Virus record (IMG/VR): IMGVR_UViG_3300036944_001324
Coordinates: 186,001-250,000 of that record
Length of the DNA stretch: 64,000 bases
Strand: one strand, 5' to 3'
Part shown: in pieces, positions 8,407 through 44,330 of the stretch
Layout: the number at the start of each line of letters is the position of its first letter
Position numbering within the stretch: the stretch's first letter is position 1
The notes under the pieces: model-generated
Told to the model about the DNA's origin: nothing
Seen by the model: the letters and a program-made list of their open reading frames with translations, nothing else
Database searches by the model: none
Position numbers and translations under genes: made by a program

Positions 8407-9723
8407 ATGGATAAACTGACCTATTTTCTCAATGCGCTTAACGCGCAAGCGCATCACCAACGCAGCTGGGTGCTCCGCGCCTTCTCGTTGTTCCAAGAAG
8501 ACCCCGAGAGCTGGAAGAGTTCCTTGGAACCTTTTCGGTTAACACTCAGTCCCACGGGCTACGCCTTTGTGGACCCTTCGTCCAAGGACAAGCTCACCCC
8601 TATCGATCTCCCAGAAGGCAGTGTGGACCTCGCTTCCAGGCCTTTGTTCCATGCTTTCGAGACGGTTACTGCACCTGCAGGGTTTCCCTTCTTTCCTGAA
8701 GGCGGTATCACCACTTACGGTAACTTGTTGTTCAACGCTACCGTGTTCTCGGCAGTCGGTAATCGGCTTGGTGTTTTTAACGACTACGTTGACATCGGGA
8801 AGATCGAGAGCAAGCTTCCTGAAATTCTGGTGGATGATCCTGCGCCTGGTGAAACTGTTCCAGAAGGCAAGCTTTCTATTTCTGATCACATCCGTTTCTG
8901 TGATGCGGTCGGTTATCTCCAAGAATTCACGCAGCTGTTCACCCAGGCTTTGACGGAAAAAGCAATAACTCCGCCAACAGGCCTTGAGCAAAAGAAAGCG
9001 GAGATTCTTGAGAAGTACAAGGACAGCTTGAATGATCCACTCACGCAGACCAAGATCTACAGCGAGTTGGTGGCGTTTGACTCTGAATACTTGCGTGGTG
9101 ACCCAAGTGAGTTGTTCCTCATCTCTGCAAAGTCACGCAGCACCGTGCGGCGCAAGTTGTTCTTGATCCAAGGCGCTGAAGCTGGGTTGTCCAACTCTCA
9201 AGAACTTCCCCTCATTACCAACAGTCTGGTAGAAGGTTGGCAAAAGGAAAGCATCCCACAGATCATCGATGTTCTGCGCGCTGGCTCTTTCGACCGTGGC
9301 AGCGAAACAGAACTCGGTGGCGTGGAAGCCAAGTGGCTGATGCGCTCTACGTCCAACATTCGTGTGGTCTATCAGGACTGCGGAACGAAGATGGGGAAAT
9401 ACACCAAGGTGCTCCCTCACAACGTGCACAAAATGGTTGGACGGTATTACACCGCCAACGATCAGGTTGTTCTCATCGAAACTGCTGAGGATGCTAACAA
9501 GCTGGTGGGTCAAAGCGTCTTGTTGCGTGCTCCTCACTACTGCCGGCTTCCCCACACTGACTACTGCCATGTTTGTCTGGGTGTGAAGTTGTCTGCCAAC
9601 AAAGACGGGGTGTCGATGGCCGCTACTGCACGGGGTGGTGGTTTCCTTTCCATCTTCTTGGGTGCTATGCATGCCAAGGTCATGGAAAGTGCTGCGCTTG
9701 ACCTTGAGACGACCTTGACGTAA
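8407..9723 (+). CDS. multisubunit RNA polymerase beta' subunit, C-terminal part (virion RNAP, phiKZ gp80-like)
   Basis: GSFDRG.ET..GG bridge-helix region; QDCGT and LRAPHYC...YCHVCLG Zn site; trigger-loop-like AATARGGGFLSIFLGAMH; 438 aa. Confidence 0.88.
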   Translation: MDKLTYFLNALNAQAHHQRSWVLRAFSLFQEDPESWKSSLEPFRLTLSPTGYAFVDPSSKDKLTPIDLPEGSVDLASRPLFHAFETVTAPAGFPFFPEGGITTYGNLLFNATVFSAVGNRLGVFNDYVDIGKIESKLPEILVDDPAPGETVPEGKLSISDHIRFCDAVGYLQEFTQLFTQALTEKAITPPTGLEQKKAEILEKYKDSLNDPLTQTKIYSELVAFDSEYLRGDPSELFLISAKSRSTVRRKLFLIQGAEAGLSNSQELPLITNSLVEGWQKESIPQIIDVLRAGSFDRGSETELGGVEAKWLMRSTSNIRVVYQDCGTKMGKYTKVLPHNVHKMVGRYYTANDQVVLIETAEDANKLVGQSVLLRAPHYCRLPHTDYCHVCLGVKLSANKDGVSMAATARGGGFLSIFLGAMHAKVMESAALDLETTLT

Positions 9724-11937: not shown

Positions 11938-14900
11938 GTGAGTACTATTTATCTCGGAACCATCGATGGTGGTGGTGACGGTAAAGCCTTGTTGCTTGCC
12001 GCTATCAATGCGGCGCAAGGCACCAACTACACACTGGTTGATTGGGATTTTGGCATCCCTGAACTGGTGACAGTTCCGCAGCCTACACACAACTCCAAGG
12101 TGGCGTTTGGCCCCAAGGAAGGCACAGGCGCTTACGGTGTCAAGACCATCTACTACAACCGGATTCACGCCAGTGAACTCGGTAACGTCATTGTTCCGTA
12201 CTCCGGTGAGATGTACATCACTGACGTGCTCGCCAAGATCAATGAGAAGTACGGTATCCTCATCAAGCCCGAGGACATCTACGACGCTGTGATCCCGGTG
12301 CCTGGTGGTGGGCAAAACCAAGTGCAAGTGAACTTGGAATTCCGTCCGGAATCCATCATCTTCTACAACGCGGTTCAAATCCAAATCGGACAGAACGACC
12401 CCACTGGCGACACGGTGCCTACCGCTCCTTTTGAAGCGTACCACACCTTCATGTTCAACCAGGCTCAGAACTTCGAGATTGGTGGGACACCGTACGTGAC
12501 GCTGGAGCCTTTCAGCCTTGCGGTTGATCGCGACCGGACGCGCCAACGGGTGGGTTTGATGCGTGACAACACGTTCACCAACAATGCGTCCGCTCACATT
12601 CGTGAGCGCATGACGCTCGCACAGTTCGAAGCTCGCAAGGATTACCTGCCTTTCGTGGGTATGTGGCTTGACGACGTGAGCAAACGTCACTACGCGGTCA
12701 ACCCCGTCGGTGACGTTTACATGAGTGAGTTGAACGTTGATGGTTGGGAGTTCGTTGCCAATGCGCTCGGTTACGACAGCACCGATCCAACGGTTGTGAG
12801 CAACGGGTTCAACAACCCCTACGTCAAAGCTGTGACCACCGACGCTAACGGCGTGACGTGGTTCTTGGCATTGGGATCAGATGGTCTGCCGCGTGTTTAC
12901 AACACGAGCACCAGCCATTCAGTCTGGACACCTATCGCTACGCAGACGCTGCGCATGATCTCGCTCAAAGCTGCGGCGTGGAATAGCGTGAAGGTGCTCG
13001 ACGCACTTCACATCGACAACAAACTGCATTTGCTCATTCGGGCAGGCGAGCAGTACGACATCCACCCGAACAAGAGCCGTGATACTCCTTCTGTGGAAAT
13101 CATCTCCACCAACGGTGGTGGTGTGGACTACTTCCCTCTGGGTGCAACGCTGGCGCAGTACTCCGGTATCGAGCTCGACACGGCTTCTACCGATGGTCAT
13201 TGGACCTTCGTGTCCCCGCGCGCTGGCGCTACGGTGGTGGACATCGCTGCATTGCTTCCGAGCAAGGTGAACAACAACACTTACGCAGTGTTCTACCGGC
13301 ATGTTGCAGGTAGCGAATACGTGGCTTCCATATTGCCTCATTCCTACCTGGGTGATTCGAGCGTTCGCGGCGAGATGAGCCTGCGTGCTTACCAGCTCCC
13401 TCTGGACGACATCCCTGCAGAAGTCGGTGGTGTTCCCGTGACCAACCACTACTTGGACGTGGTGGAGATTGTGGCACCTACCGAAGTAGCTGACTTCAAT
13501 CACTACTTCTTGAAGACCGGTACTCGCACACAGCTGAACTTCCTGTCCTACGGTGTGAAGGTGTTGACGTCGGTGGCTACTCGCACTGCACGCGCTCCTT
13601 GGTTTGAAAGCCAAGTGAACCTGACCTCGTCGCAACAACCCGTACAAGTGGTTGTACAGTGCAAGGGCCTTCGCAACCATCTGTTGTTCCAGAACGCAGA
13701 TGCAGTGCACCGGTTGTTGTTCCGTCAGAACAACAGTCAAACCACTTTCTCTGCCGAGGTGGATAGTTCCATCAAGTTGGCCGGGCATACGGGGTTCTCC
13801 CATGTTTGCACGAATGCAGCTGGCGTGTACGTACCGCCAGCCGTGATTGACTCTCCGCTATTGACAACAGCCTTGACGGTTGATCAGGACTTCGAATCGG
13901 TGTTTGCGGATATCAACTATTCGTTCACCGCCAAGGATGCTACCGACAACTATCGCTGGTACACAGCGACAGCAACCAACCAGCCTTTGGCCTTGCGTAC
14001 CCCAAGTCGCAATTACGCCTTCATGGGTAACGCGCCATGTTTTGTTGGGTCTGAGAACAACGAGCTGATCTACTGGGCGCCTGGCGGTAACGGCGTGTTC
14101 CGCAGCACCAACAAGGGCAAGAGCTGGCAAGAGTTTGCGGCTGCTCCTTCGTTCTACAGCCAAGAGCGTACTCCAACCTCTTTGCTGAACATCATCGGAG
14201 CTGCCAGTCTGCGTTTGCGCCCTGAGCACTTCCTTGAGAGCACCTACGTCAGTGGTGTTCTGATGGTTGAGACGAAGATCAATGAGCCGGTCGAAGTCTA
14301 CGACGTCAACGCTGAGTTGACAAGTCGTGCTACCACCATGGCTGACCACATTCTCTATCGGGTGCAAGCCGGTGACAAGACCTACGTAGCATCAACACCA
14401 CAGACTGGTTACGGTATCAACGCACTGAGCACGTACTCGCCTCGCCGCATTCTGGGCTGGGATACCGATGCGGCTAACAACTTCGAGACCATCGGTCAGT
14501 ACACGACGACGCCAGCCGCGCCGTACGCTACACCGCACAACCTCGACAACTACATGTTCAACATCACTGGAACACTTCGTGATTTCAGTCGTGATGCCAA
14601 GTACTTGGGCTTCCGTCACTGGGTGCTGGTTGACGATGCTGATGTCTGGAGTCTGCACTTCACCAACGCGGTCCAGCCTGAGAAAACGATCGGGATGTTT
14701 GGTTCTGCCAACATCACACTCACTGCGTTCAAACCTGAAGTGAGTTTCCATCTGTGGGACTACTTGGATGCACCTCAGCAGTACATTCCGTATGTCTTCT
14801 ACGGCGGCAAGCGCATTGTCTTGCTTGAGCGTTTGGATGATTTGCTTGACTTCACTGCCACGCAGCACATCCTGAACATTCCGGGTGACAATGGGAACGC

Positions 14901-15312
14901 TTTGGTTCCTGTCCCGATGCACAATGCCAATCGTCGCGATTACTTGCTGGCTCAGAAGGCCAACGGTATCTTCCGTGTGACTTACGTATGGGACGGTATC
15001 AACAAGGTGTCCACGATCGATCTGGAGAAGATCTTTGACCTGGCAGCTGGTGGTCTCAATACCCTTGATATCATCTCCGGTACTCGCACCGGCGTTGCGT
15101 CTCAGAACGCACCGCTTGAAACCATGATCCCTGATCAACTGCCTGAAGGTACTGAGATCGGCTGGTACTGCGTTGGCGTGGATAAACACACCCGCTTTGC
15201 TGATGGTGCTGGTGGTTACACCGAAACTGTTACTGTCGACAGTGCCGACTGCGGCTTCGTGCAGTCGATGGTGGTGGGTGACGGCTCTGGCATCTCCGGA
15301 GGTGAGGGTTGA
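11938..15312 (+). CDS. large tail/baseplate-associated structural protein (tail-fibre-like)
   Basis: N-terminal LAAINAA..DFGIP..YYNRI anchor typical of jumbo-phage tail proteins; Asp-box FRSTNKGKSW; C-terminal C.G.D...ADGAGG...CG motif. Confidence 0.7.
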   Translation: MSTIYLGTIDGGGDGKALLLAAINAAQGTNYTLVDWDFGIPELVTVPQPTHNSKVAFGPKEGTGAYGVKTIYYNRIHASELGNVIVPYSGEMYITDVLAKINEKYGILIKPEDIYDAVIPVPGGGQNQVQVNLEFRPESIIFYNAVQIQIGQNDPTGDTVPTAPFEAYHTFMFNQAQNFEIGGTPYVTLEPFSLAVDRDRTRQRVGLMRDNTFTNNASAHIRERMTLAQFEARKDYLPFVGMWLDDVSKRHYAVNPVGDVYMSELNVDGWEFVANALGYDSTDPTVVSNGFNNPYVKAVTTDANGVTWFLALGSDGLPRVYNTSTSHSVWTPIATQTLRMISLKAAAWNSVKVLDALHIDNKLHLLIRAGEQYDIHPNKSRDTPSVEIISTNGGGVDYFPLGATLAQYSGIELDTASTDGHWTFVSPRAGATVVDIAALLPSKVNNNTYAVFYRHVAGSEYVASILPHSYLGDSSVRGEMSLRAYQLPLDDIPAEVGGVPVTNHYLDVVEIVAPTEVADFNHYFLKTGTRTQLNFLSYGVKVLTSVATRTARAPWFESQVNLTSSQQPVQVVVQCKGLRNHLLFQNADAVHRLLFRQNNSQTTFSAEVDSSIKLAGHTGFSHVCTNAAGVYVPPAVIDSPLLTTALTVDQDFESVFADINYSFTAKDATDNYRWYTATATNQPLALRTPSRNYAFMGNAPCFVGSENNELIYWAPGGNGVFRSTNKGKSWQEFAAAPSFYSQERTPTSLLNIIGAASLRLRPEHFLESTYVSGVLMVETKINEPVEVYDVNAELTSRATTMADHILYRVQAGDKTYVASTPQTGYGINALSTYSPRRILGWDTDAANNFETIGQYTTTPAAPYATPHNLDNYMFNITGTLRDFSRDAKYLGFRHWVLVDDADVWSLHFTNAVQPEKTIGMFGSANITLTAFKPEVSFHLWDYLDAPQQYIPYVFYGGKRIVLLERLDDLLDFTATQHILNIPGDNGNALVPVPMHNANRRDYLLAQKANGIFRVTYVWDGINKVSTIDLEKIFDLAAGGLNTLDIISGTRTGVASQNAPLETMIPDQLPEGTEIGWYCVGVDKHTRFADGAGGYTETVTVDSADCGFVQSMVVGDGSGISGGEG

Positions 15313-25071: not shown

Positions 25072-25281
25072 ATGGAAAAACATATCAAATTCCTGCGCTT
25101 CATCGCCTTTATCCTGTTCATGGGGTTTCTTTACTTCGTGTTCAGAGCCTATGACACCGGATGGATTTTCAACGTGAGTATTGGAACGTTCTTCCTGCTC
25201 GCTTTGGCGATCTCTACCGTTGTTTACTTCTTCATCGGGCCTGCACTCAAGTGGCTCTTCCCAACCAAGGACAAAAAGTGA
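25072..25281 (+). CDS. small membrane protein (2 TM)
   Basis: Two hydrophobic segments. Confidence 0.7.
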   Translation: MEKHIKFLRFIAFILFMGFLYFVFRAYDTGWIFNVSIGTFFLLALAISTVVYFFIGPALKWLFPTKDKK

Positions 25282-25994
25282 TCAAAACTTTGAAACTGTT
25301 TTCTCTGCTGCTGGTTGCAGCTTTTCTGGTGGCTTGTAACAAGGCGCCCAGCAACGTACACGTGATCAACACCACGGACTGTGGGGTCACTTGGAAGCAG
25401 ATCCCTACGGGGTCTGCGGTGCCCAAGACCCCGATGCATTGCGAGTACAACGTCGCGTTGCCTAACTGGCCGATGGCCGGTGATGCCGAGTTCCGAACAC
25501 AGTTCCAAAAGAACGTGATGGCCAAGGTACGCATCAGCTACACGTACGAGATCGATGATCCTGTTATGTACGTGAAGGAAGCACGCTACCTCGGCAAAAT
25601 GGGCGGGTCTCTCGAACTGTCGGCCAGCAGCGTTGGTGATCAGTACGAGCTGGCCGAGAACATCATCATCGACAAACGCTTTCGTGAGATCATGACCGAG
25701 ATCACACGCAACATCGATGTGATCACGTTTGACTCAGCCAAGCTCGAAGCCCAGGTGGAAAAAGAAATCACCGATCACCTGAAGAAGAACGGCATCAGTA
25801 TGGGTGACATCGCTATGGTGATCGAGCTCGATGAGTTGACGCGTCTTTCCATCGATACGGTGACGGCCATTCGTTTGTTCGAATCGGCTGGTGCTGCGGA
25901 AGTGGGGCGTGAAGTTCTCAAAGGTCGCGCTAGCGCTACCCGCATCATCGTCAGCAACGATCAACCGTCCAAACAAGCTAGTTCCAAAGACTAG
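25278..25994 (+). CDS. SPFH/band-7-like lipoprotein
   Basis: GTG overlapping the upstream stop; lipobox FLVA-C; SPFH-like core (ISYTYEI.DP ... FDSAKLE ... GISMGDI). Confidence 0.6.
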   Translation: MIKTLKLFSLLLVAAFLVACNKAPSNVHVINTTDCGVTWKQIPTGSAVPKTPMHCEYNVALPNWPMAGDAEFRTQFQKNVMAKVRISYTYEIDDPVMYVKEARYLGKMGGSLELSASSVGDQYELAENIIIDKRFREIMTEITRNIDVITFDSAKLEAQVEKEITDHLKKNGISMGDIAMVIELDELTRLSIDTVTAIRLFESAGAAEVGREVLKGRASATRIIVSNDQPSKQASSKD

Positions 25995-27839: not shown

Positions 27840-27874
27840 AAGGTAGCTAGGGAAGCTTTTGCTTCCCTAGCCTT
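27832..27874 (+). terminator. hairpin after CGGCATAA
   Basis: gctagggaagc/gcttccctagc stem. Confidence 0.7.
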
Positions 27875-27912
27875 CTATTCAATTTTTTGTTTCAAAGATA
27901 GTGAGAATCGCA

Positions 27913-28746
27913 ATGAATCAAGAAGTTAAAATTACTGTTCTCAAAGCAGTACGTCAGCCTAAGCCACTTACCGCAAGAGCACCCGCATCTTCTCTACAAG
28001 AACACCGACTGGCTTTCTTGGCAGCGAATAACAAGAGTGGCTTTGCACTAGATGAACTAGGTTCAGATGTACAGAAAGTTGACAGTCTCTTCGACGTCTT
28101 CTTTTTGGTGCGAAGCGTTCAGACGTTAGACAAACCTTTTATAGATCTCTTGATAAAAAGAATCAAGTGTATTTTGAACAGCAACAGTTTAGACTGCGGA
28201 AGAAACGACGCTCGGACGATTATCTACAGGACGCTTGGTTTTCCATCTAAAAAAGCGTTTGACGCCGCCTGCGTCAAGAAAAACTACCAAGAGTTCTGGG
28301 TAAACCCCAAGTACATGGCACCAATGTCTGACTTCAACCTGGAAAAGGAAATCGTTAGATCAGATCCAAATACAGAGGCTTTCCTTGGTCGTATAAATGA
28401 CGGCTTTAAGAAGTCTGGAGAGAGGGCCTTTTACCCGGATCTGCCTTGGAAACAAGTTCTATCATTAATCGAGCTGTTATTGGAACACCAGGGTAAGGTG
28501 CCGCAGCAGAAAGTTCGAAACGTGAGTCGGGTGATTACTCAACAGAGTAAAAATGTAATTCACCACACTGAGGCGCTGACGATTCTTGCGAGGCTTTTAG
28601 GCTACGAAACGTGGCCCAAAGCGTTCAATTCGACTGCAGGCGGTTTCATCAAGTGTCGCCGGTATCCTCACTTCTATACCAAGCTTCTTGAGGAGTTTGG
28701 TCATCTAAGCATGAAAAATCAGTACAAAGAAAATGACAGCAAATAA
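27913..28746 (+). CDS. hypothetical protein
   Basis: Long ORF; C-terminal H.EAL.ILARLLGYETW motif. Confidence 0.65.
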   Translation: MNQEVKITVLKAVRQPKPLTARAPASSLQEHRLAFLAANNKSGFALDELGSDVQKVDSLFDVFFLVRSVQTLDKPFIDLLIKRIKCILNSNSLDCGRNDARTIIYRTLGFPSKKAFDAACVKKNYQEFWVNPKYMAPMSDFNLEKEIVRSDPNTEAFLGRINDGFKKSGERAFYPDLPWKQVLSLIELLLEHQGKVPQQKVRNVSRVITQQSKNVIHHTEALTILARLLGYETWPKAFNSTAGGFIKCRRYPHFYTKLLEEFGHLSMKNQYKENDSK

Positions 28747-28999
28747 AACTGTTAAAGCACTAGTCATTGTTCGTCACTGGATCACCGACCATGTTGTTCG
28801 AGACACCGTCGAATTCGATACAGAGATTGACACGACAGACGAGACCCTGGCGGTTGCCAAGGTTATCGATAATTACACAGCTTTCTTGTGTAATGAGACC
28901 AAGGTCAAGAAGAACCCCGAGTACGACTGGGCGCAAGCCTACGTCAAGGCCAAGACAGATGAGTTGACCCGCTGCTACCTTGAAGTGGTCATTGTTTAG
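28733..28999 (+). CDS. hypothetical protein
   Basis: Packed ORF. Confidence 0.7.
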   Translation: MTANKTVKALVIVRHWITDHVVRDTVEFDTEIDTTDETLAVAKVIDNYTAFLCNETKVKKNPEYDWAQAYVKAKTDELTRCYLEVVIV

Positions 29000-29017
29000 T
29001 TAAAGGAAGAATGAGTT

Positions 29018-29632
29018 ATGAAAAACGCTGTAAAAATATATCCTGTCTTCAAAGACACCGGATCGTCTCCTACTGCTGATGCGTTTGTAGACGCATCTGT
29101 GCTGTGCCCTTGGCCGTTCCTGCTCCCTGATGGAAGCAGCGGGCTTACCAGCGCCCTGAAGGTTAACAAGGCTGTCGATCTGATTGGCATTTCACAAAGT
29201 GAAGACATGCTGAAGTCAGGTCTGACGAGGATTAGTGACTGTATTGCTCCTGATATCTACATCGGGAGCATTGTCGCGAACCTTCGCACCATCGACGCCT
29301 TCGGGGTGTACATCATCGACACGTCCGAAAACCCTCAAAGGAACTTTGTTGCCCATCCCGACAGCAACGACAAAATACGGCATCTCAAGATGCGCGCTAA
29401 CCACATTGTCAACTTGAAAGGACATCTTGTTGAATTTGCTGTCTTGTTGTCCGGGCAGGTTAAGTTGGACACGGGTGAGTTCGAAGTTACACCCCTTGGT
29501 ATCGAATTAGTGGGTGTTACCAATAGCGACGGAGATGGCGTTAGTGACGCCACCAAAGCCAATTTCGAACAGCTCGTAAAACGAATCCAAATTCTGGGCG
29601 TCGTACCCGTTTTCTCGTTGGTCGACGCCTAG
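29018..29632 (+). CDS. stand-alone paralog of an internal domain of the phiKZ-type major capsid protein
   Basis: F...SV..P....G....TSAL.V.K.VDLIGISQ ... D.I...I.I..I ... LSG....G.....P..IE....N.DG ... ILG..P matches, collinearly, my recollection of the mid-region of phiKZ gp120. Confidence 0.55.
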   Translation: MKNAVKIYPVFKDTGSSPTADAFVDASVLCPWPFLLPDGSSGLTSALKVNKAVDLIGISQSEDMLKSGLTRISDCIAPDIYIGSIVANLRTIDAFGVYIIDTSENPQRNFVAHPDSNDKIRHLKMRANHIVNLKGHLVEFAVLLSGQVKLDTGEFEVTPLGIELVGVTNSDGDGVSDATKANFEQLVKRIQILGVVPVFSLVDA

Positions 29633-30132: not shown

Positions 30133-30133
30133 T

Positions 30134-30204
30134 GGGTCAGCTTTGACGCCATACAGGAGGACCTTTCGGGGTCCTCCTTTTATGTCGATTCTATTTTTTC
30201 TTGG
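30134..30204 (+). repeat. 71-bp direct repeat, copy 1 (hairpin plus TTATGTCG plus T-tract)
   Basis: 67/71 identical to 31673..31743. Confidence 0.9.
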
Positions 30205-31654: not shown

Positions 31655-31672
31655 ATAAGAGGCTCCCGTGCG

Positions 31673-31743
31673 GGGTCAGCTTTGACATCATATAGGAGGA
31701 CCCTTCGGGGTCCTCCTTTTATGTCGATTCTATTTTTTCTTGG
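31673..31743 (+). repeat. 71-bp direct repeat, copy 2
   Basis: 67/71 identical to 30134..30204. Confidence 0.9.
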
Positions 31744-32368: not shown

Positions 32369-33121
32369 ATGTTTTCCAAAATGAAAGTTTTGTTGGTTGT
32401 GTTGTTTGCTTCTGTTATGACTGCTTGCGGTGGTGGCGGAAGTCCTGAGGTGGAAGCTGAACTCAGTAGCTCCAAGTCGTATTCTTACGTAACTGCTTCT
32501 GTGGATGTCGTTGGTGATTCCATCTCCATTGGTGTGAATACGGAAGTGTCACCCATCATGCGTTTGACTGAATACCGTCCTAACTGGGCGGTTGTTCACC
32601 ATTCAGCTGGTGGGTTGCAACTCGACACCATGATTGCTGGTTACTCGGAACCAACACCTGGCGCTCATCCGATCTATTTCCCGATGGGTCCTCAACTGCC
32701 ATTCCCGCAAGTGCAGCGCAGCAGCCGCTATGTTGTGATTGCTTTGGGTGTGAATGATGCTTTGAACAACAGCACGATGCAAGAGGCTGTGCGGTTTGAA
32801 CACAACATGCGTTACGTTATCCGTACGTTGGTTGCAGAAAACCGTGTGCCTGTTCTCACTGGTGTTCCCAATCTGGCTGTGAACCCTGTGTTTCTGAAGC
32901 ATTACAACAACGTCACGTTGATGCTGGCTCAGGAATACGGTTTGGTGCACGCTGGCTGGGGTGAAGCTTACGGGATCGAAGGCGTAGGTAGTGACGGCAT
33001 CCACCCCCACCAAGGTGGCTCTGACATGCTCGCTGGTCGCCTCATCCGCGCTATCGACCAAGCTATCGAGCTTGACAACGCTGGTGTCTACGCCAACATC
33101 CAAATGTTGGCCATGAAGTAA
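32369..33121 (+). CDS. SGNH/GDSL-family esterase lipoprotein
   Basis: Lipobox MTA-C; blocks VVGDSIS, AGG, LGVND and DGIHP. Confidence 0.85.
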   Translation: MFSKMKVLLVVLFASVMTACGGGGSPEVEAELSSSKSYSYVTASVDVVGDSISIGVNTEVSPIMRLTEYRPNWAVVHHSAGGLQLDTMIAGYSEPTPGAHPIYFPMGPQLPFPQVQRSSRYVVIALGVNDALNNSTMQEAVRFEHNMRYVIRTLVAENRVPVLTGVPNLAVNPVFLKHYNNVTLMLAQEYGLVHAGWGEAYGIEGVGSDGIHPHQGGSDMLAGRLIRAIDQAIELDNAGVYANIQMLAMK

Positions 33122-42257: not shown

Positions 42258-44330
42258 ATGACAAACGAAGAACAAGAGTATCTCAAGATCAACGAGAAGC
42301 TGCGTGAGGCCGCGCCAGCGTACTACGTTGAAGACAAGCCCATCATGACCGATGCCGAATACGATCAATTGATCGTTCGTGCTCGCGAATTGGAAAAGCG
42401 TGTTGATAAAGCGATCGTCGATGCTGAACGCCTGAAGGGTACGCCACTGTACGACGTGGTTGGATCTGTTGCCAAGGGTCTTAAGCCTGCTAAGCATGAG
42501 ACACCTATGCTCAGTTTGCGTACTGAGACGAATACTTCCGATGAACCCATCCGTAATTTCCTGCTGAAAGTGGGAAAGCGGCTGGACGAACTTGGTTTTC
42601 CACCGAATTGTACCAGTTACTGTGCTGAGTACAAATTTGACGGACTGGCTTTGAGCCTCAAGTACAGGGATGGAAAACTTCTCCGTGCAGTTACCCGTGG
42701 CGACGGTTACGAAGGTGAAAACGTTACGCATAACGCTCTCGTCGTTAAAGGCATACCTACGACTATCGGTCTGAAGCGGGATCTGGAAGTTCGTGGTGAA
42801 GTGATGATGACTAAAGAGATGTTTGCTAGTTTGAATAAGCAAGCATTGATAAGCGGAAGTCGTGTCTTTGTAAACCCGCGTAACGCTGCCGCTGGTTCCA
42901 TGCGACTTCTCGATTCGAATGAATGCAAACGACGCGGACTAATCTTTGTTGCTTACAGCGCCATAGGGCCTGCGGTTGATATGGAAACCGACAGCCATCT
43001 CTATCGCATATTGACCTTGGAAAACCTGGGTTTTGAAATCGGGCTTACACCTCTACGTACTAAAACACCAGAGCGACTAGCGGAGTTCTACCAAAAGACT
43101 CTCAATGAACGGACCACAATACCGTTTGAAATCGATGGGGTAGTCTACAAAGTCGACTCTATCGAGCAACAAGAAAAGCTTGGTGTCATCGGTAAAGAAC
43201 CTGTCTGGGCAATTGCTCACAAGTTCCCACCGGAGGAAGCCACCACCAGACTCGAGAGCATCGACATCCAAGTCGGGCGCACTGGCAAGTTCACTCCCGT
43301 CGCCAAGTTGAAGCCTATCTTCGTGGGTGGCGTTACTGTATCGAGCGTGACGCTCAGTAACATCTTCGACGTGCGTCGCAAGGACATCCGTCCAGGCGAT
43401 ACGGTGTTCGTTCGTCGTGCTGGTGACGTGATCCCTGAGATCACGACACGAGCCAACCGTAAGCGTGATGGTTACGTTCCTAACTTCCAGATGCCTCCCC
43501 AGTGTCCGGTTTGCGGCGGACTTGCTATCCGTTTCAAAGGCGAAAGCAACTACCAATGCACCAACAAGTACGAGTGTCCGGCGCAACTCTCTGGCTCCAT
43601 CTTGCATTACGTCAGTCGTGCCTGTATGGACATCGAGGGTTTTGGTGAAGAGACGGTTGACCTGTTGACGAAAGAAGGCTACGTGCGTTCATTCGTTGAC
43701 TTGTACCGCTTGACACCACAGATCCTTACAGAAGTAGGATTGGGTCCGAAGAAAGGACAGAACCTGCTCGACGCCATCGATGGTTCTCGTGTGAACTCTC
43801 TAGCTCGTTTCATCTACGGGCTGGGTATTCGCTATGTGGGTGCCAACACTTCCAAGATTCTTGCTAATCGTTTCAAGACGATCGGTGCGCTCTTTGAAGC
43901 CAAGCGGGAAGAACTCATCAACCTGCCTGACATGGGGCCCGTTACAACGGACTCCGTGGTTTCCTACATCGGCAACGCGCACAGGCGAGCGTTGGTGTTT
44001 GAGACCATTGCGGTGGGTAAGTTGATTCTGACCACCGTAGAGCAACCTCCAAAGCCCGTAGGACCGCTCACAGGCCAATCTTTCGTGGTGTCTGGACGGT
44101 TGACACACTACGAAGCGATAGAGCCTTCTAAGACCCGTGAAGCCTTCATTGATGTTTTGGAGGATCTGGGTGCTTCTGTCACCGATAAGGTGAATAAAGA
44201 TACAACGGCACTTATCATAGGTGAGAAACCTTCGAGCAAGTTAGCCAAAGCGAAAGCTCTGGGCATCCGTGTTATGACAGACAAGGAAGCCATGGAACAG
44301 TTCATGAACCTGGAAGTCTCCACGTTCTAA
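42258..44330 (+). CDS. ligA: NAD-dependent DNA ligase
   Basis: TDAEYD, HETPMLSL, motif I EYKFDG, EVRGEV, NPRNAAAGS, WAIAHKF, OB fold, C4 Zn finger (CPVC...C...C), HhH repeats and C-terminal BRCT. Confidence 0.97.
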   Translation: MTNEEQEYLKINEKLREAAPAYYVEDKPIMTDAEYDQLIVRARELEKRVDKAIVDAERLKGTPLYDVVGSVAKGLKPAKHETPMLSLRTETNTSDEPIRNFLLKVGKRLDELGFPPNCTSYCAEYKFDGLALSLKYRDGKLLRAVTRGDGYEGENVTHNALVVKGIPTTIGLKRDLEVRGEVMMTKEMFASLNKQALISGSRVFVNPRNAAAGSMRLLDSNECKRRGLIFVAYSAIGPAVDMETDSHLYRILTLENLGFEIGLTPLRTKTPERLAEFYQKTLNERTTIPFEIDGVVYKVDSIEQQEKLGVIGKEPVWAIAHKFPPEEATTRLESIDIQVGRTGKFTPVAKLKPIFVGGVTVSSVTLSNIFDVRRKDIRPGDTVFVRRAGDVIPEITTRANRKRDGYVPNFQMPPQCPVCGGLAIRFKGESNYQCTNKYECPAQLSGSILHYVSRACMDIEGFGEETVDLLTKEGYVRSFVDLYRLTPQILTEVGLGPKKGQNLLDAIDGSRVNSLARFIYGLGIRYVGANTSKILANRFKTIGALFEAKREELINLPDMGPVTTDSVVSYIGNAHRRALVFETIAVGKLILTTVEQPPKPVGPLTGQSFVVSGRLTHYEAIEPSKTREAFIDVLEDLGASVTDKVNKDTTALIIGEKPSSKLAKAKALGIRVMTDKEAMEQFMNLEVSTF

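What the first reader, a model, noticed from the sequence alone, without database searches (positions are those of the whole stretch)
29018..29632. Stand-alone copy of a major-capsid-protein domain among early genes: a possible capsid decoy
Seen: a 204-aa ORF inside a block of accessory genes that starts near a putative early promoter, far from any head genes. From memory of phiKZ major capsid protein gp120, its middle segment (..NFVATSVVAP..TTSALAVGKTINLFGLGQ..EALDRNIGIDAIY..DTKGLP..F..LTGTADVERGTININP..VEV..IINAQG..VIGWWP) aligns collinearly with the whole ORF (..AFVDASVLCP..LTSALKVNKAVDLIGISQ..DCIAPDIYIGSI..DTSENP..F..LSGQVKLDTGEFEVTP..IEL..VTNSDG..ILGVVP). Inferred: an inserted capsid domain was excised as a free-standing gene. 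It could titrate a host capsid-sensing defence, act as a capsid decoration or assembly modulator, or be a duplication relic.
Basis: inference. Interest (0 to 1): 0.8.

Follow-up and report, generated by a model that had tools for sequence, protein, structure and literature searches.

The report
Stand-alone capsid insertion-domain paralogue
A jumbo phage carries a small, conserved gene encoding only the outer "insertion" domain of the phiKZ-type capsid protein; such free copies are widespread and unstudied, were not detected in virions in two cultured phages, and in some phages are fused to an immune-signal sponge, hinting at a counter-defence role.

Summary
The ORF is real: 29018-29632 (+), 204 aa, with a good RBS. 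Its whole length is homologous to the insertion (I) domain of phiKZ-type major capsid proteins: Pfam PhiKZ_MCP 61 bits against a cut-off of 27; AF2 pLDDT 93; Foldseek TM 0.80-0.82 only to the phiKZ and phiKp24 MCPs. It has no HK97 core, and no other MCP fragment lies in the window. The gene is functional: five syntenic orthologues are all 204 aa, with dN/dS of 0.23-0.38. It belongs to an old, fast-diverging family of free I-domain proteins in many jumbo phages, including cultured ones (201phi2-1 gp106, RP12 ORF214, an RTH11 protein). In three genomes that carry both forms, the free copy is not closest to its own MCP. These genes mostly sit among non-structural genes. Two cultured homologues are absent from virion proteomes. 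A sister subclade is fused to a Tad1-like sponge domain, with or without a cyclophilin. Function is untested. The best guess is a soluble capsid-surface mimic working in host interaction or counter-defence (about 0.4). A role binding the phage's own MCP is the main rival. A relic and a split gene are rejected.

The parts
29018..29632 (+). ORF204: free-standing paralogue of the I (insertion) domain of the phiKZ-type major capsid protein; 204 aa, 21.9 kDa, pI 5.1
29003..29009 (+). Shine-Dalgarno-like AAGGAAG, 8 nt before the ATG. Only 18 nt separate the ORF from the upstream gene, and there is no hairpin or motif of its own.
   Evidence: read directly from the sequence
27846..27871 (+). GC-rich hairpin (11-12 bp stem) after the preceding 448-aa gene; 5' boundary of the four-gene unit that holds ORF204
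27901..28746 (+). First gene of the unit, 281 aa; no family match
28733..28999 (+). Second gene of the unit, 88 aa; no family match; conserved upstream in relatives L005, L006 and L007
29656..30132 (+). Fourth gene of the unit, 158 aa; no family match; conserved directly downstream in relatives (89% identity in L004)
30155..30178 (+). GC-rich hairpin followed by TTTATGTCG; 3' boundary of the unit

Best explanation
Shown. ORF204 is a complete, independently folding copy of the I (insertion) domain of a phiKZ-type major capsid protein. It lacks the N-arm, the linkers and the P and A domains that build capsomers, so it cannot be a capsid subunit. It is a functional gene under purifying selection. 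It belongs to an old, widespread and fast-diverging family of free I-domain proteins in jumbo phages. These genes mostly lie away from the MCP gene, among non-structural genes.

Inferred. The protein is made as a soluble, non-virion protein that displays the same fold the capsid protein exposes on its outer surface. It acts by protein-protein binding as a capsid-surface mimic.

Most likely role (about 0.4, speculative). It is an accessory host-interaction or counter-defence factor. It would occupy or misdirect a host factor that recognises the exposed I domain of the abundant cytoplasmic capsid protein. Alternatively it would serve as the recognition module of composite anti-defence proteins, as in relatives where the same module is fused to a Tad1-like nucleotide sponge.
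For: Identity and fold:
- Pfam, PHROG and MCP-profile matches.
- The whole ORF aligns to MCP residues of about 215-445, which is the I domain, residues 248-472 in gp120 (PMC11297242).
- AF2 pLDDT 93.3, pTM 0.88.
- The only significant PDB folds are the phiKp24 and phiKZ MCPs, TM 0.80-0.82.

Functional gene:
- Four orthologue clusters at 80-94% identity, all 204 aa, syntenic.
- dN/dS 0.23-0.38.
- Short identical contigs occur in two wastewater metatranscriptomes, one of them inside the ORF (weak evidence).

Old family:
- About 20 short (177-239 aa) homologues on contigs of 127-327 kb.
- The in-MCP I domains form one clade, SH-aLRT 96.
- Same-genome pairs are not sisters, and the AU test does not reject one clade of all free forms, p=0.26.
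- Cultured members exist.

Accessory and non-structural character:
- RTH11's copy lies next to RNR genes, 34 kb from its MCP.
- RP12 ORF214 lies among Tmk, ThyA, RtcB, Prs and NAMPT genes.
- 201phi2-1 gp106 lies between chimallin and an nvRNAP subunit.
- L012's copy lies beside an NAD ligase gene.
- 201phi2-1 gp106 has no BLAST relative in 50,697 phage records.
- Free forms have long branches.

Not virion-associated:
- RP31 ORF211 is absent from the 32-protein virion proteome, which does detect other 23-25 kDa proteins.
- 201phi2-1 gp106 has no virion mass-spectrometry flag.

Link to counter-defence:
- At least 15 proteins have the layout [I-domain]-[Tad1-like] or [cyclophilin]-[I-domain]-[Tad1-like].
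- The C-terminal domain matches Tad1 structures at E about 3e-18 and phiKZ gp184 (Tad1) at 3e-24.
- Tad1 is the one described jumbo-phage anti-defence protein.
Against: - There is no direct evidence for any host partner.
- ORF204 has no Tad1 domain, and none lies in the window.
- The fused proteins belong to a different subclade, at about 25-30% identity to ORF204.
- In phiKZ, the N-terminal part of gp184/Tad1 is a capsid anchor. The fused I-domain module could equally be a capsid-binding anchor, which favours the rival explanation.
- From my own knowledge, no known defence system senses a phiKZ-type I domain. A faithful mimic of a trigger might activate a sensor and not block it.
- dN/dS indicates plain purifying selection, with no arms-race signal at this sampling depth.
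- No columns are conserved only in the free forms.
- The virion absence rests on two distant homologues and on negative mass-spectrometry results.
- Expression timing is unknown.
Confidence: 0.38

Rival explanations
1. It binds the phage's own capsid protein. The free I domain would use the natural I-domain contacts: the I-I dimer at two-fold axes, or docking on the neighbouring subunit's A/P junction. It would bind MCP or procapsids transiently, either to modulate assembly or as a capsid anchor that recruits cargo.
For: - In capsids the I domain packs on neighbouring subunits and forms symmetric I-I dimers (PMC11297242; Goslar preprint).
- The fold and the conserved signature columns are fully retained in the free forms.
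- In fused relatives the module sits N-terminal to a Tad1-like domain. That is the position of the capsid-anchoring N-terminus of phiKZ gp184/Tad1.
- Some fusions also carry a cyclophilin foldase.
- A transient binder would be missing from virion proteomes.
Against: - The gene is not encoded with the head genes in most genomes.
- It was not found in the roughly 125 kb of phiKZ that I scanned.
- 201phi2-1 gp106 carries no phiKZ-homologue note in its annotation.
- The free forms diverge faster than the MCP I domains they would have to match.
- The published dimer-interface residues vary even among MCPs, so retention cannot be judged.
- The cyclophilin also occurs fused to the Tad1-like domain alone (P0212), so the foldase link is to the sponge and not to the I domain.
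Confidence: 0.3
2. The I-domain fold has been re-used as a generic binding or oligomerisation module for a purpose unrelated to capsids or defence, for example a function at the phage nucleus or in nucleotide metabolism.
For: - Its neighbours are heterogeneous: chimallin and nvRNAP in 201phi2-1, RNR in RTH11, nucleotide and NAD metabolism genes in RP12, a ligase in L012.
- No partner gene is conserved across lineages.
- The module occurs in several architectures, including a tandem duplication in P0019.
Against: Nothing positive points to any particular alternative function. The only annotated fusion partners are a Tad1-like sponge and a cyclophilin.
Confidence: 0.15
3. It is a low-copy decoration protein or minor capsid protein.
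For: It is homologous to the outermost capsid domain, which self-associates on the capsid surface. phiKZ-type capsids carry many minor proteins.
Against: - RP31 ORF211 and 201phi2-1 gp106 were not detected in virions.
- No I-domain-like minor protein is listed among the minor capsid proteins named in the phiKZ capsid paper.
- By PDB fold search the model matched only the MCP chains of that capsid entry.
- The gene is encoded away from the head genes.
Confidence: 0.1
4. It is a non-functional duplication relic, or a fragment of a split or disrupted MCP gene.
For: It covers only part of an MCP.
Against: - dN/dS is 0.23-0.38, and the 204-aa length and the start and stop are conserved in five lineages.
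- It has its own RBS.
- Its boundaries coincide with the structural domain, and the model is confident and compact.
- No other MCP fragment lies in the 64 kb.
- Full-length MCPs coexist with free copies in L013, RP12 and RTH11.
Confidence: 0.03

Closest known systems
I (insertion) domain of the phiKZ major capsid protein gp120 (residues 248-472; PDB 8Y6V), and of the phiKp24 (8BFL) and Goslar MCPs
   Same: Same fold and homologous sequence over the whole ORF. Domain boundaries match. Conserved signature columns are shared: P9, F23, T44, L55, G68, D74 and G146 in ORF numbering.
   Different: It is a separate gene without the N-arm, the I-domain linkers, the P domain, the A domain or the C-arm. 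It is only 25-30% identical to MCP I domains, belongs to a distinct lineage, and was not detected in virions in the two homologues that could be checked.
phiKZ gp184 / Tad1: a capsid-anchored, injected sponge for Thoeris and CBASS signalling nucleotides
   Same: Relatives of ORF204 carry a C-terminal domain homologous to gp184/Tad1 (E 3e-24 and 3e-18). Their I-domain module lies N-terminal, in the position of gp184's capsid-anchoring part.
   Different: ORF204 has no Tad1-like domain. gp184's N-terminus is not related to the I domain.
Independently folding insertion domains and decoration proteins of other tailed phages (P22 coat I-domain, T4 gp23 insertion domain, Soc, Hoc, gpD). This comparison rests on my own knowledge and was not tested here.
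   Same: An accessory beta-rich domain on the outside of an HK97-fold capsid that stabilises contacts between subunits.
   Different: Those are either parts of the MCP or true virion components. No natural free-standing, non-virion paralogue of an MCP insertion domain turned up in the literature searches I could run.
Full-length MCP paralogues such as the T4 gp24 vertex protein (from my own knowledge)
   Same: Duplication of capsid-protein sequence within one phage genome.
   Different: gp24 keeps the whole HK97 fold and is built into the capsid. ORF204 keeps only the inserted domain.

Membership tests
PhiKZ-type major capsid protein (Pfam PF25620) | Sequence match above the curated threshold | tested here: met
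   61.1 bits against a cut-off of 27
PhiKZ-type major capsid protein (Pfam PF25620) | HK97 core: N-arm, P domain, A domain (about 720 aa) | tested here: not met
   Only profile positions 142-268 of 635 (Pfam) and 220-429 of 721 (MCP profile) are covered. The ORF is 204 aa, and no other fragment lies in the window.
Free-standing I-domain paralogues of jumbo phages (family defined here) | Whole protein collinear with the MCP I domain and predicted to fold alone | tested here: met
Free-standing I-domain paralogues of jumbo phages (family defined here) | Separate gene that coexists with a full-length MCP in the same genome | tested here: inconclusive
   Met for the relatives L013, RP12 and RTH11. 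The window phage's own MCP lies outside the window and was not recovered.
Capsid decoration / minor capsid protein | Present in purified virions | tested here: not met
   The homologues RP31 ORF211 and 201phi2-1 gp106 are absent from published virion proteomes. Not testable for ORF204 itself.
Tad1/Acb2 nucleotide sponge | Acb2_Tad1 hairpin domain | tested here: not met
   No match of the Tad1-like profile to ORF204 or to any ORF in the window. The domain is present only in fused relatives.
Anti-defence decoy (mimic of an immune trigger) | Binds and neutralises a host sensor of the mimicked protein | not testable with these tools
   Needs host genetics or biochemistry.
Early gene class | Early promoter or early transcription | tested here: inconclusive
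   No sigma-70 enrichment. The hairpin-linked motifs look like terminators. Metatranscriptome contigs carry no timing information.

The most novel reading that the evidence does not exclude
Jumbo phages encode free copies of the exposed surface domain of their capsid protein as anti-immunity tools. These would act either as decoys that blind host sensors of the abundant cytoplasmic capsid protein, or as targeting modules that bring nucleotide sponges (Tad1-like) and foldases to the site where capsid-triggered immune signalling starts. That would be the first structural-protein-domain mimic known in phage counter-defence.
Probability: 0.2. Interest if true: 0.9.

Novelty: new variant of a known kind. 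Interest (0 to 1): 0.65.

Why it matters
Insertion domains of HK97-fold capsid proteins are normally thought of only as parts of the shell. This gene shows that the phiKZ-type I domain also exists as an independent, selected gene family across jumbo phages, including tractable models (201phi2-1 gp106, RP12 ORF214, an RTH11 protein). None of these has been named or studied. The recurrent fusion of this module to a Tad1-like sponge, and to a cyclophilin, links a capsid-derived fold to the only anti-defence protein so far described in jumbo phages. It gives concrete experiments on how nucleus-forming phages, whose DNA is hidden, deal with immunity that could sense their cytoplasmic proteins. It also bears on how capsid insertion domains arise: by capture of a free protein, or by release of a domain.

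Tried and rejected
- The small gene directly upstream of MCP genes (phiKZ gp119, CF8_0115, FLC9 gp93, AgentSmith_56) is not related to ORF204.
- phiKZ gp125, which lies in a position syntenic with the L013 copy, is not related.
- No free I-domain was found in phiKZ at 40-62 kb or 112-215 kb. The rest of phiKZ was not scanned.
- I looked for the window phage's own MCP by searching with an MCP profile for a hit on a 271,654-bp contig. None appeared among the best 120 hits.
- No partner gene is conserved across distant phages.
- A neighbour of about 155-162 aa is shared by L004, L005 and L012. AF2 gave pLDDT 60 and Foldseek gave no hit below E=3.
- The ESM Atlas gave only noise-level scores.
- Pfam and PHROG scans of the unit's other genes gave nothing.
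- The dimer-interface residues R296, D366, K415 and D424 are not conserved even among MCPs, so they cannot discriminate.
- I tried to classify the promoter. The hairpin+TTATG(C/T)CG element occurs on both strands and between convergent genes, so it looks like a terminator and cannot date the unit.
- The literature holds nothing on 201phi2-1 gp106. The 'gp106' in PMC10643120 is a PhiPA3 protein.

Full report
THE OBSERVATION

An ORF of 204 aa lies at 29018-29632 on the + strand. It starts at an ATG that is preceded by AAGGAAG at 29003-29009. Only 18 nt separate it from the stop codon of an upstream 88-aa gene.

The quoted alignment was not real.

The conclusion nevertheless holds on real data:
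- Pfam PhiKZ_MCP (PF25620): E=7.9e-17, 61 bits against a cut-off of 27.
- PHROG 3231 'major head protein': 1.4e-16.
- blastp to the real gp120: E=8e-8 over residues 250-322.
- Three solved jumbo-phage MCPs by sequence search.
- A 721-position profile of full-length MCPs: 110 bits to ORF204 at profile positions 220-429, and to nothing else in the 64-kb window.

WHICH DOMAIN IT IS

An iterated family profile aligns the whole ORF (positions 1-203) collinearly with MCP residues of about 215-445 in some 40 MCPs. The phiKZ capsid paper defines gp120 residues 248-472 as the I (insertion) domain. This domain is an elaboration of the HK97 E-loop. It sits on the outer surface over the neighbouring subunit and forms I-I dimers between capsomers (PMC11297242; the same is reported for Goslar).

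AlphaFold2 with a 70-sequence alignment gives a compact, beta-rich model with pLDDT 93.3 and pTM 0.88. In the PDB, the only significant Foldseek matches are the phiKp24 and phiKZ MCPs (E 1e-11 to 1e-13; TM 0.80-0.82 normalised to the query; about 225 aligned columns). ORF204 is therefore an I domain and nothing else. It has no N-arm, linkers, P domain or A domain, and so cannot be a capsomer subunit.

IS IT A LIVE GENE?

The window is part of a 271,654-bp contig. That contig has no close relative among 50,697 phage records. Four orthologue clusters from other metagenomes are 80-94% identical and all exactly 204 aa. They are syntenic with the downstream 158-aa gene and the GDSL-lipase gene. Pairwise dN/dS is 0.23-0.38 at dS of 0.11-0.43. 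Two genuine wastewater metatranscriptome libraries hold short, 99-100% identical contigs scattered over this gene block, one of them at 29322-29473 inside the ORF. This is compatible with transcription, but DNA carry-over cannot be excluded. A relic, a pseudogene and a piece of a split MCP gene are all rejected.

THE FAMILY

An exhaustive profile search of 1.84 billion representative proteins found 74 hits.
- About 40 are MCPs of about 700-750 aa, matched at positions of about 220-440.
- About 20 are short proteins of 177-239 aa that match end to end. Several lie on contigs of 127-327 kb, so they are complete genes of other jumbo phages.
- Others carry the module at the N-terminus of longer proteins, and one carries it twice (P0019).

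The BFVD fold search adds small uncharacterised proteins of cultured jumbo phages: 201phi2-1, Phabio, RP12, pEt-SU, Psa21, PhiEaH1 and PhiPA3 gp326. I confirmed three cultured members by profile: RTH11 WJJ55076 (77 bits), RP12 ORF214 / RP31 ORF211 (50 bits) and 201phi2-1 gp106 (49 bits).

In a maximum-likelihood tree, the I domains that sit inside MCPs form one clade (37 of 39 MCP segments; SH-aLRT 96). Nearly all free and fused forms fall on the other side. Three genomes carry both forms: L013, RP12 and RTH11. In each, the free copy is 25-34% identical to its own MCP's I domain and is never its nearest relative (ranks 15, 32 and 38 of 77). An AU test does not reject a single clade of all non-MCP forms (p=0.26). 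The free forms are therefore an old paralogous lineage. Whether the ancestor was free or inserted cannot be decided without a root. The free forms have long branches. 201phi2-1 gp106 finds only itself by tblastn in the phage collection.

CONTEXT

In the window, two strong hairpins (27846-27871 and 30155-30178) bracket four tightly spaced + strand genes of 281 aa, 88 aa, 204 aa (ORF204) and 158 aa. None of the other three has a family match.

The window also holds:
- a phiKZ-type RNAP beta subunit gene (8407-9720);
- a DUF7941 virion-protein gene (11938-15312);
- an NAD-ligase gene (42258-44330);
- tail-fibre-like genes.

No MCP gene is present.

In other genomes the free I-domain gene lies:
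- next to RNR genes in RTH11, 34 kb from the MCP;
- among thymidylate kinase, thymidylate synthase, RtcB, PRPP synthetase and NAMPT genes in RP12, about 97 kb from the MCP;
- between chimallin and an nvRNAP subunit in 201phi2-1;
- beside an ACP-like gene and an NAD-ligase gene in L012;
- 6 kb downstream of the MCP only in L013.

No partner gene is conserved across distant lineages.

The 'early promoter' claim could not be tested. Sigma-70-like sites are not enriched. The recurrent hairpin+TTATG(C/T)CG element (16 copies against about 4 expected) occurs on both strands, and back to back between convergent genes, like a terminator.

VIRION OR NOT

The RP31 virion proteome lists 32 proteins, including the MCP and several of 23-25 kDa. 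It does not contain ORF211. The 201phi2-1 annotation flags the proteins identified in virions by mass spectrometry, and gp106 has no such flag. These are negative results on distant homologues. Even so, they argue against an abundant decoration role.

THE FUSION LEAD

Searching with the N-terminally fused member P0014 found about 15 proteins built as [I-domain module]-[linker]-[C-terminal domain]. Two further proteins (P0210 from JGI; P0211 on a 326,711-bp contig, L023:8001-9593) are built as [cyclophilin PPIase, Pfam E about 1e-43]-[I-domain module]-[the same C-terminal domain]. One (P0212) is [cyclophilin]-[C-terminal domain].

The precomputed Pfam name for the C-terminal domain is Acb2_Tad1_hairpin. 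My local Pfam scan did not report this family, so I checked independently. A profile of 13 such domains hits phiKZ gp184 (8y6v chain I, E=3e-24) and five Tad1 crystal-structure sequences (E about 3e-18) over nearly their full length.

phiKZ gp184 is Tad1. It is a minor capsid protein of the inner vertex-binding complex. Its N-terminus is reported to be wedged in the capsid, and its C-terminus is reported to be released by the head protease and injected (preprint 10.1101/2025.11.23.690004). A 2026 review calls it the only anti-defence protein described in jumbo phages.

gp184's N-terminus is not I-domain-like, and the window encodes no Tad1-like domain. The fusion link is therefore a family-level clue from a sister subclade, not a property of ORF204.

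INTERPRETATION

Shown: identity, fold, selection, age, distribution and the fusions.

Inferred: the protein is soluble and non-virion, and acts by protein-protein binding as a mimic of the capsid's exposed domain.

Two readings fit the data.

(a) Host interaction or counter-defence (about 0.4). This is supported by the accessory and patchy character of the family, its fast divergence, its non-structural neighbourhoods, its absence from two virion proteomes, and its fusion to a bona fide anti-defence domain.

(b) Binding of the phage's own MCP or procapsid, as an assembly modulator or a capsid anchor for cargo (about 0.3). This is supported by the natural I-I and I-to-A/P contacts of the domain. 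It is also supported by the analogy with gp184, whose N-terminal part anchors Tad1 in the capsid.

I give (a) the edge. An assembly factor would be expected to be a core gene, linked to the head genes, and to evolve as slowly as its partner. The difference between the two readings is modest and there is no direct evidence for either.

NOVELTY

Literature searches found no description of free-standing I-domain paralogues or of capsid-domain decoys in jumbo phages. All database members are 'hypothetical protein'. I rate the finding a new variant of a known kind: a domain-level paralogue of a capsid protein. The anti-defence reading, if true, would be categorically new.

Noticed in passing
window, 16 sites, e.g. 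1999, 16389 (+) / 16410 (-), 18394, 27839 (-), 30180, 31719, 33519, 34925 (-), 40536, 56024, 62041: A GC-rich hairpin immediately followed by TTATG(C/T)CG recurs 16 times against about 4 expected. It occurs on both strands and back to back between convergent genes at about 16.4 kb. It looks like a phage-specific terminator-type signal and not a promoter.
   Followed up: partly
window 30133-30200 and 31672-31739: Two nearly identical intergenic elements of about 65 nt (GGGTCAGCTTTGAC..AGGAGGACC.TTCGGGGTCCTCCTTTTATGTCGATTCTATTTTTTCTTG) lie downstream of two different genes.
   Followed up: partly
L023:8001-9593 (326,711-bp contig), also P0210; P0212: Composite proteins: [cyclophilin PPIase]-[MCP I-domain module]-[Tad1-like sponge], and [cyclophilin]-[Tad1-like sponge]. 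About 15 further proteins are [I-domain]-[Tad1-like] (P0014, P0041, P0069, P0202-P0209, P0040, P0045, P0046).
   Followed up: partly
L019:5727-6293 (201phi2-1 gp106): The 201phi2-1 member of the family is encoded directly downstream of the nuclear-shell gene chimallin (gp105) and upstream of the nvRNAP subunit gp107. phiKZ has only a 394-bp unannotated gap at the same place.
   Followed up: partly
P0019 (645 aa): One protein carries two I-domain-like modules in tandem (residues 1-194 and 235-459). Both group with the non-MCP forms.
   Followed up: no
L004:199-666, L005:6611-7090, L012:10658-11146: Close relatives of the window phage have an extra gene of about 155-159 aa between the 88-aa gene and the I-domain gene. 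The window lacks it. A homologue at 41-45% identity lies just downstream of the I-domain gene in the distant phage L012. The fold prediction was poor and nothing matched it.
   Followed up: yes
window 11938-15312 (+): A 1124-aa protein has an N-terminal DUF7941 domain (E=3e-22). This is the family of Goslar gp22/gp23, which are reported as among the most abundant virion proteins.
   Followed up: no
window 25161-25994 (+) and 32369-33121 (+): Two predicted lipoproteins, with lipobox-like LVAC and MTAC motifs after hydrophobic N-termini. The second is a GDSL-family lipase/acylhydrolase that is conserved in relatives (L004).
   Followed up: no
L001:3660-4313 (Bacillus phage AgentSmith gene 56): The 217-aa gene upstream of the real MCP is annotated 'putative major capsid protein'. 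It shows no similarity to MCPs or to the I-domain family. The real MCP (gene 57) is annotated 'hypothetical protein'.
   Followed up: partly
window as a whole: The best DNA holder of this stretch is a shale-gas metagenome, which may be the source sample. Close relatives (85-95% nucleotide identity) occur in wastewater, biofilm, river, soil and freshwater runs.
   Followed up: no
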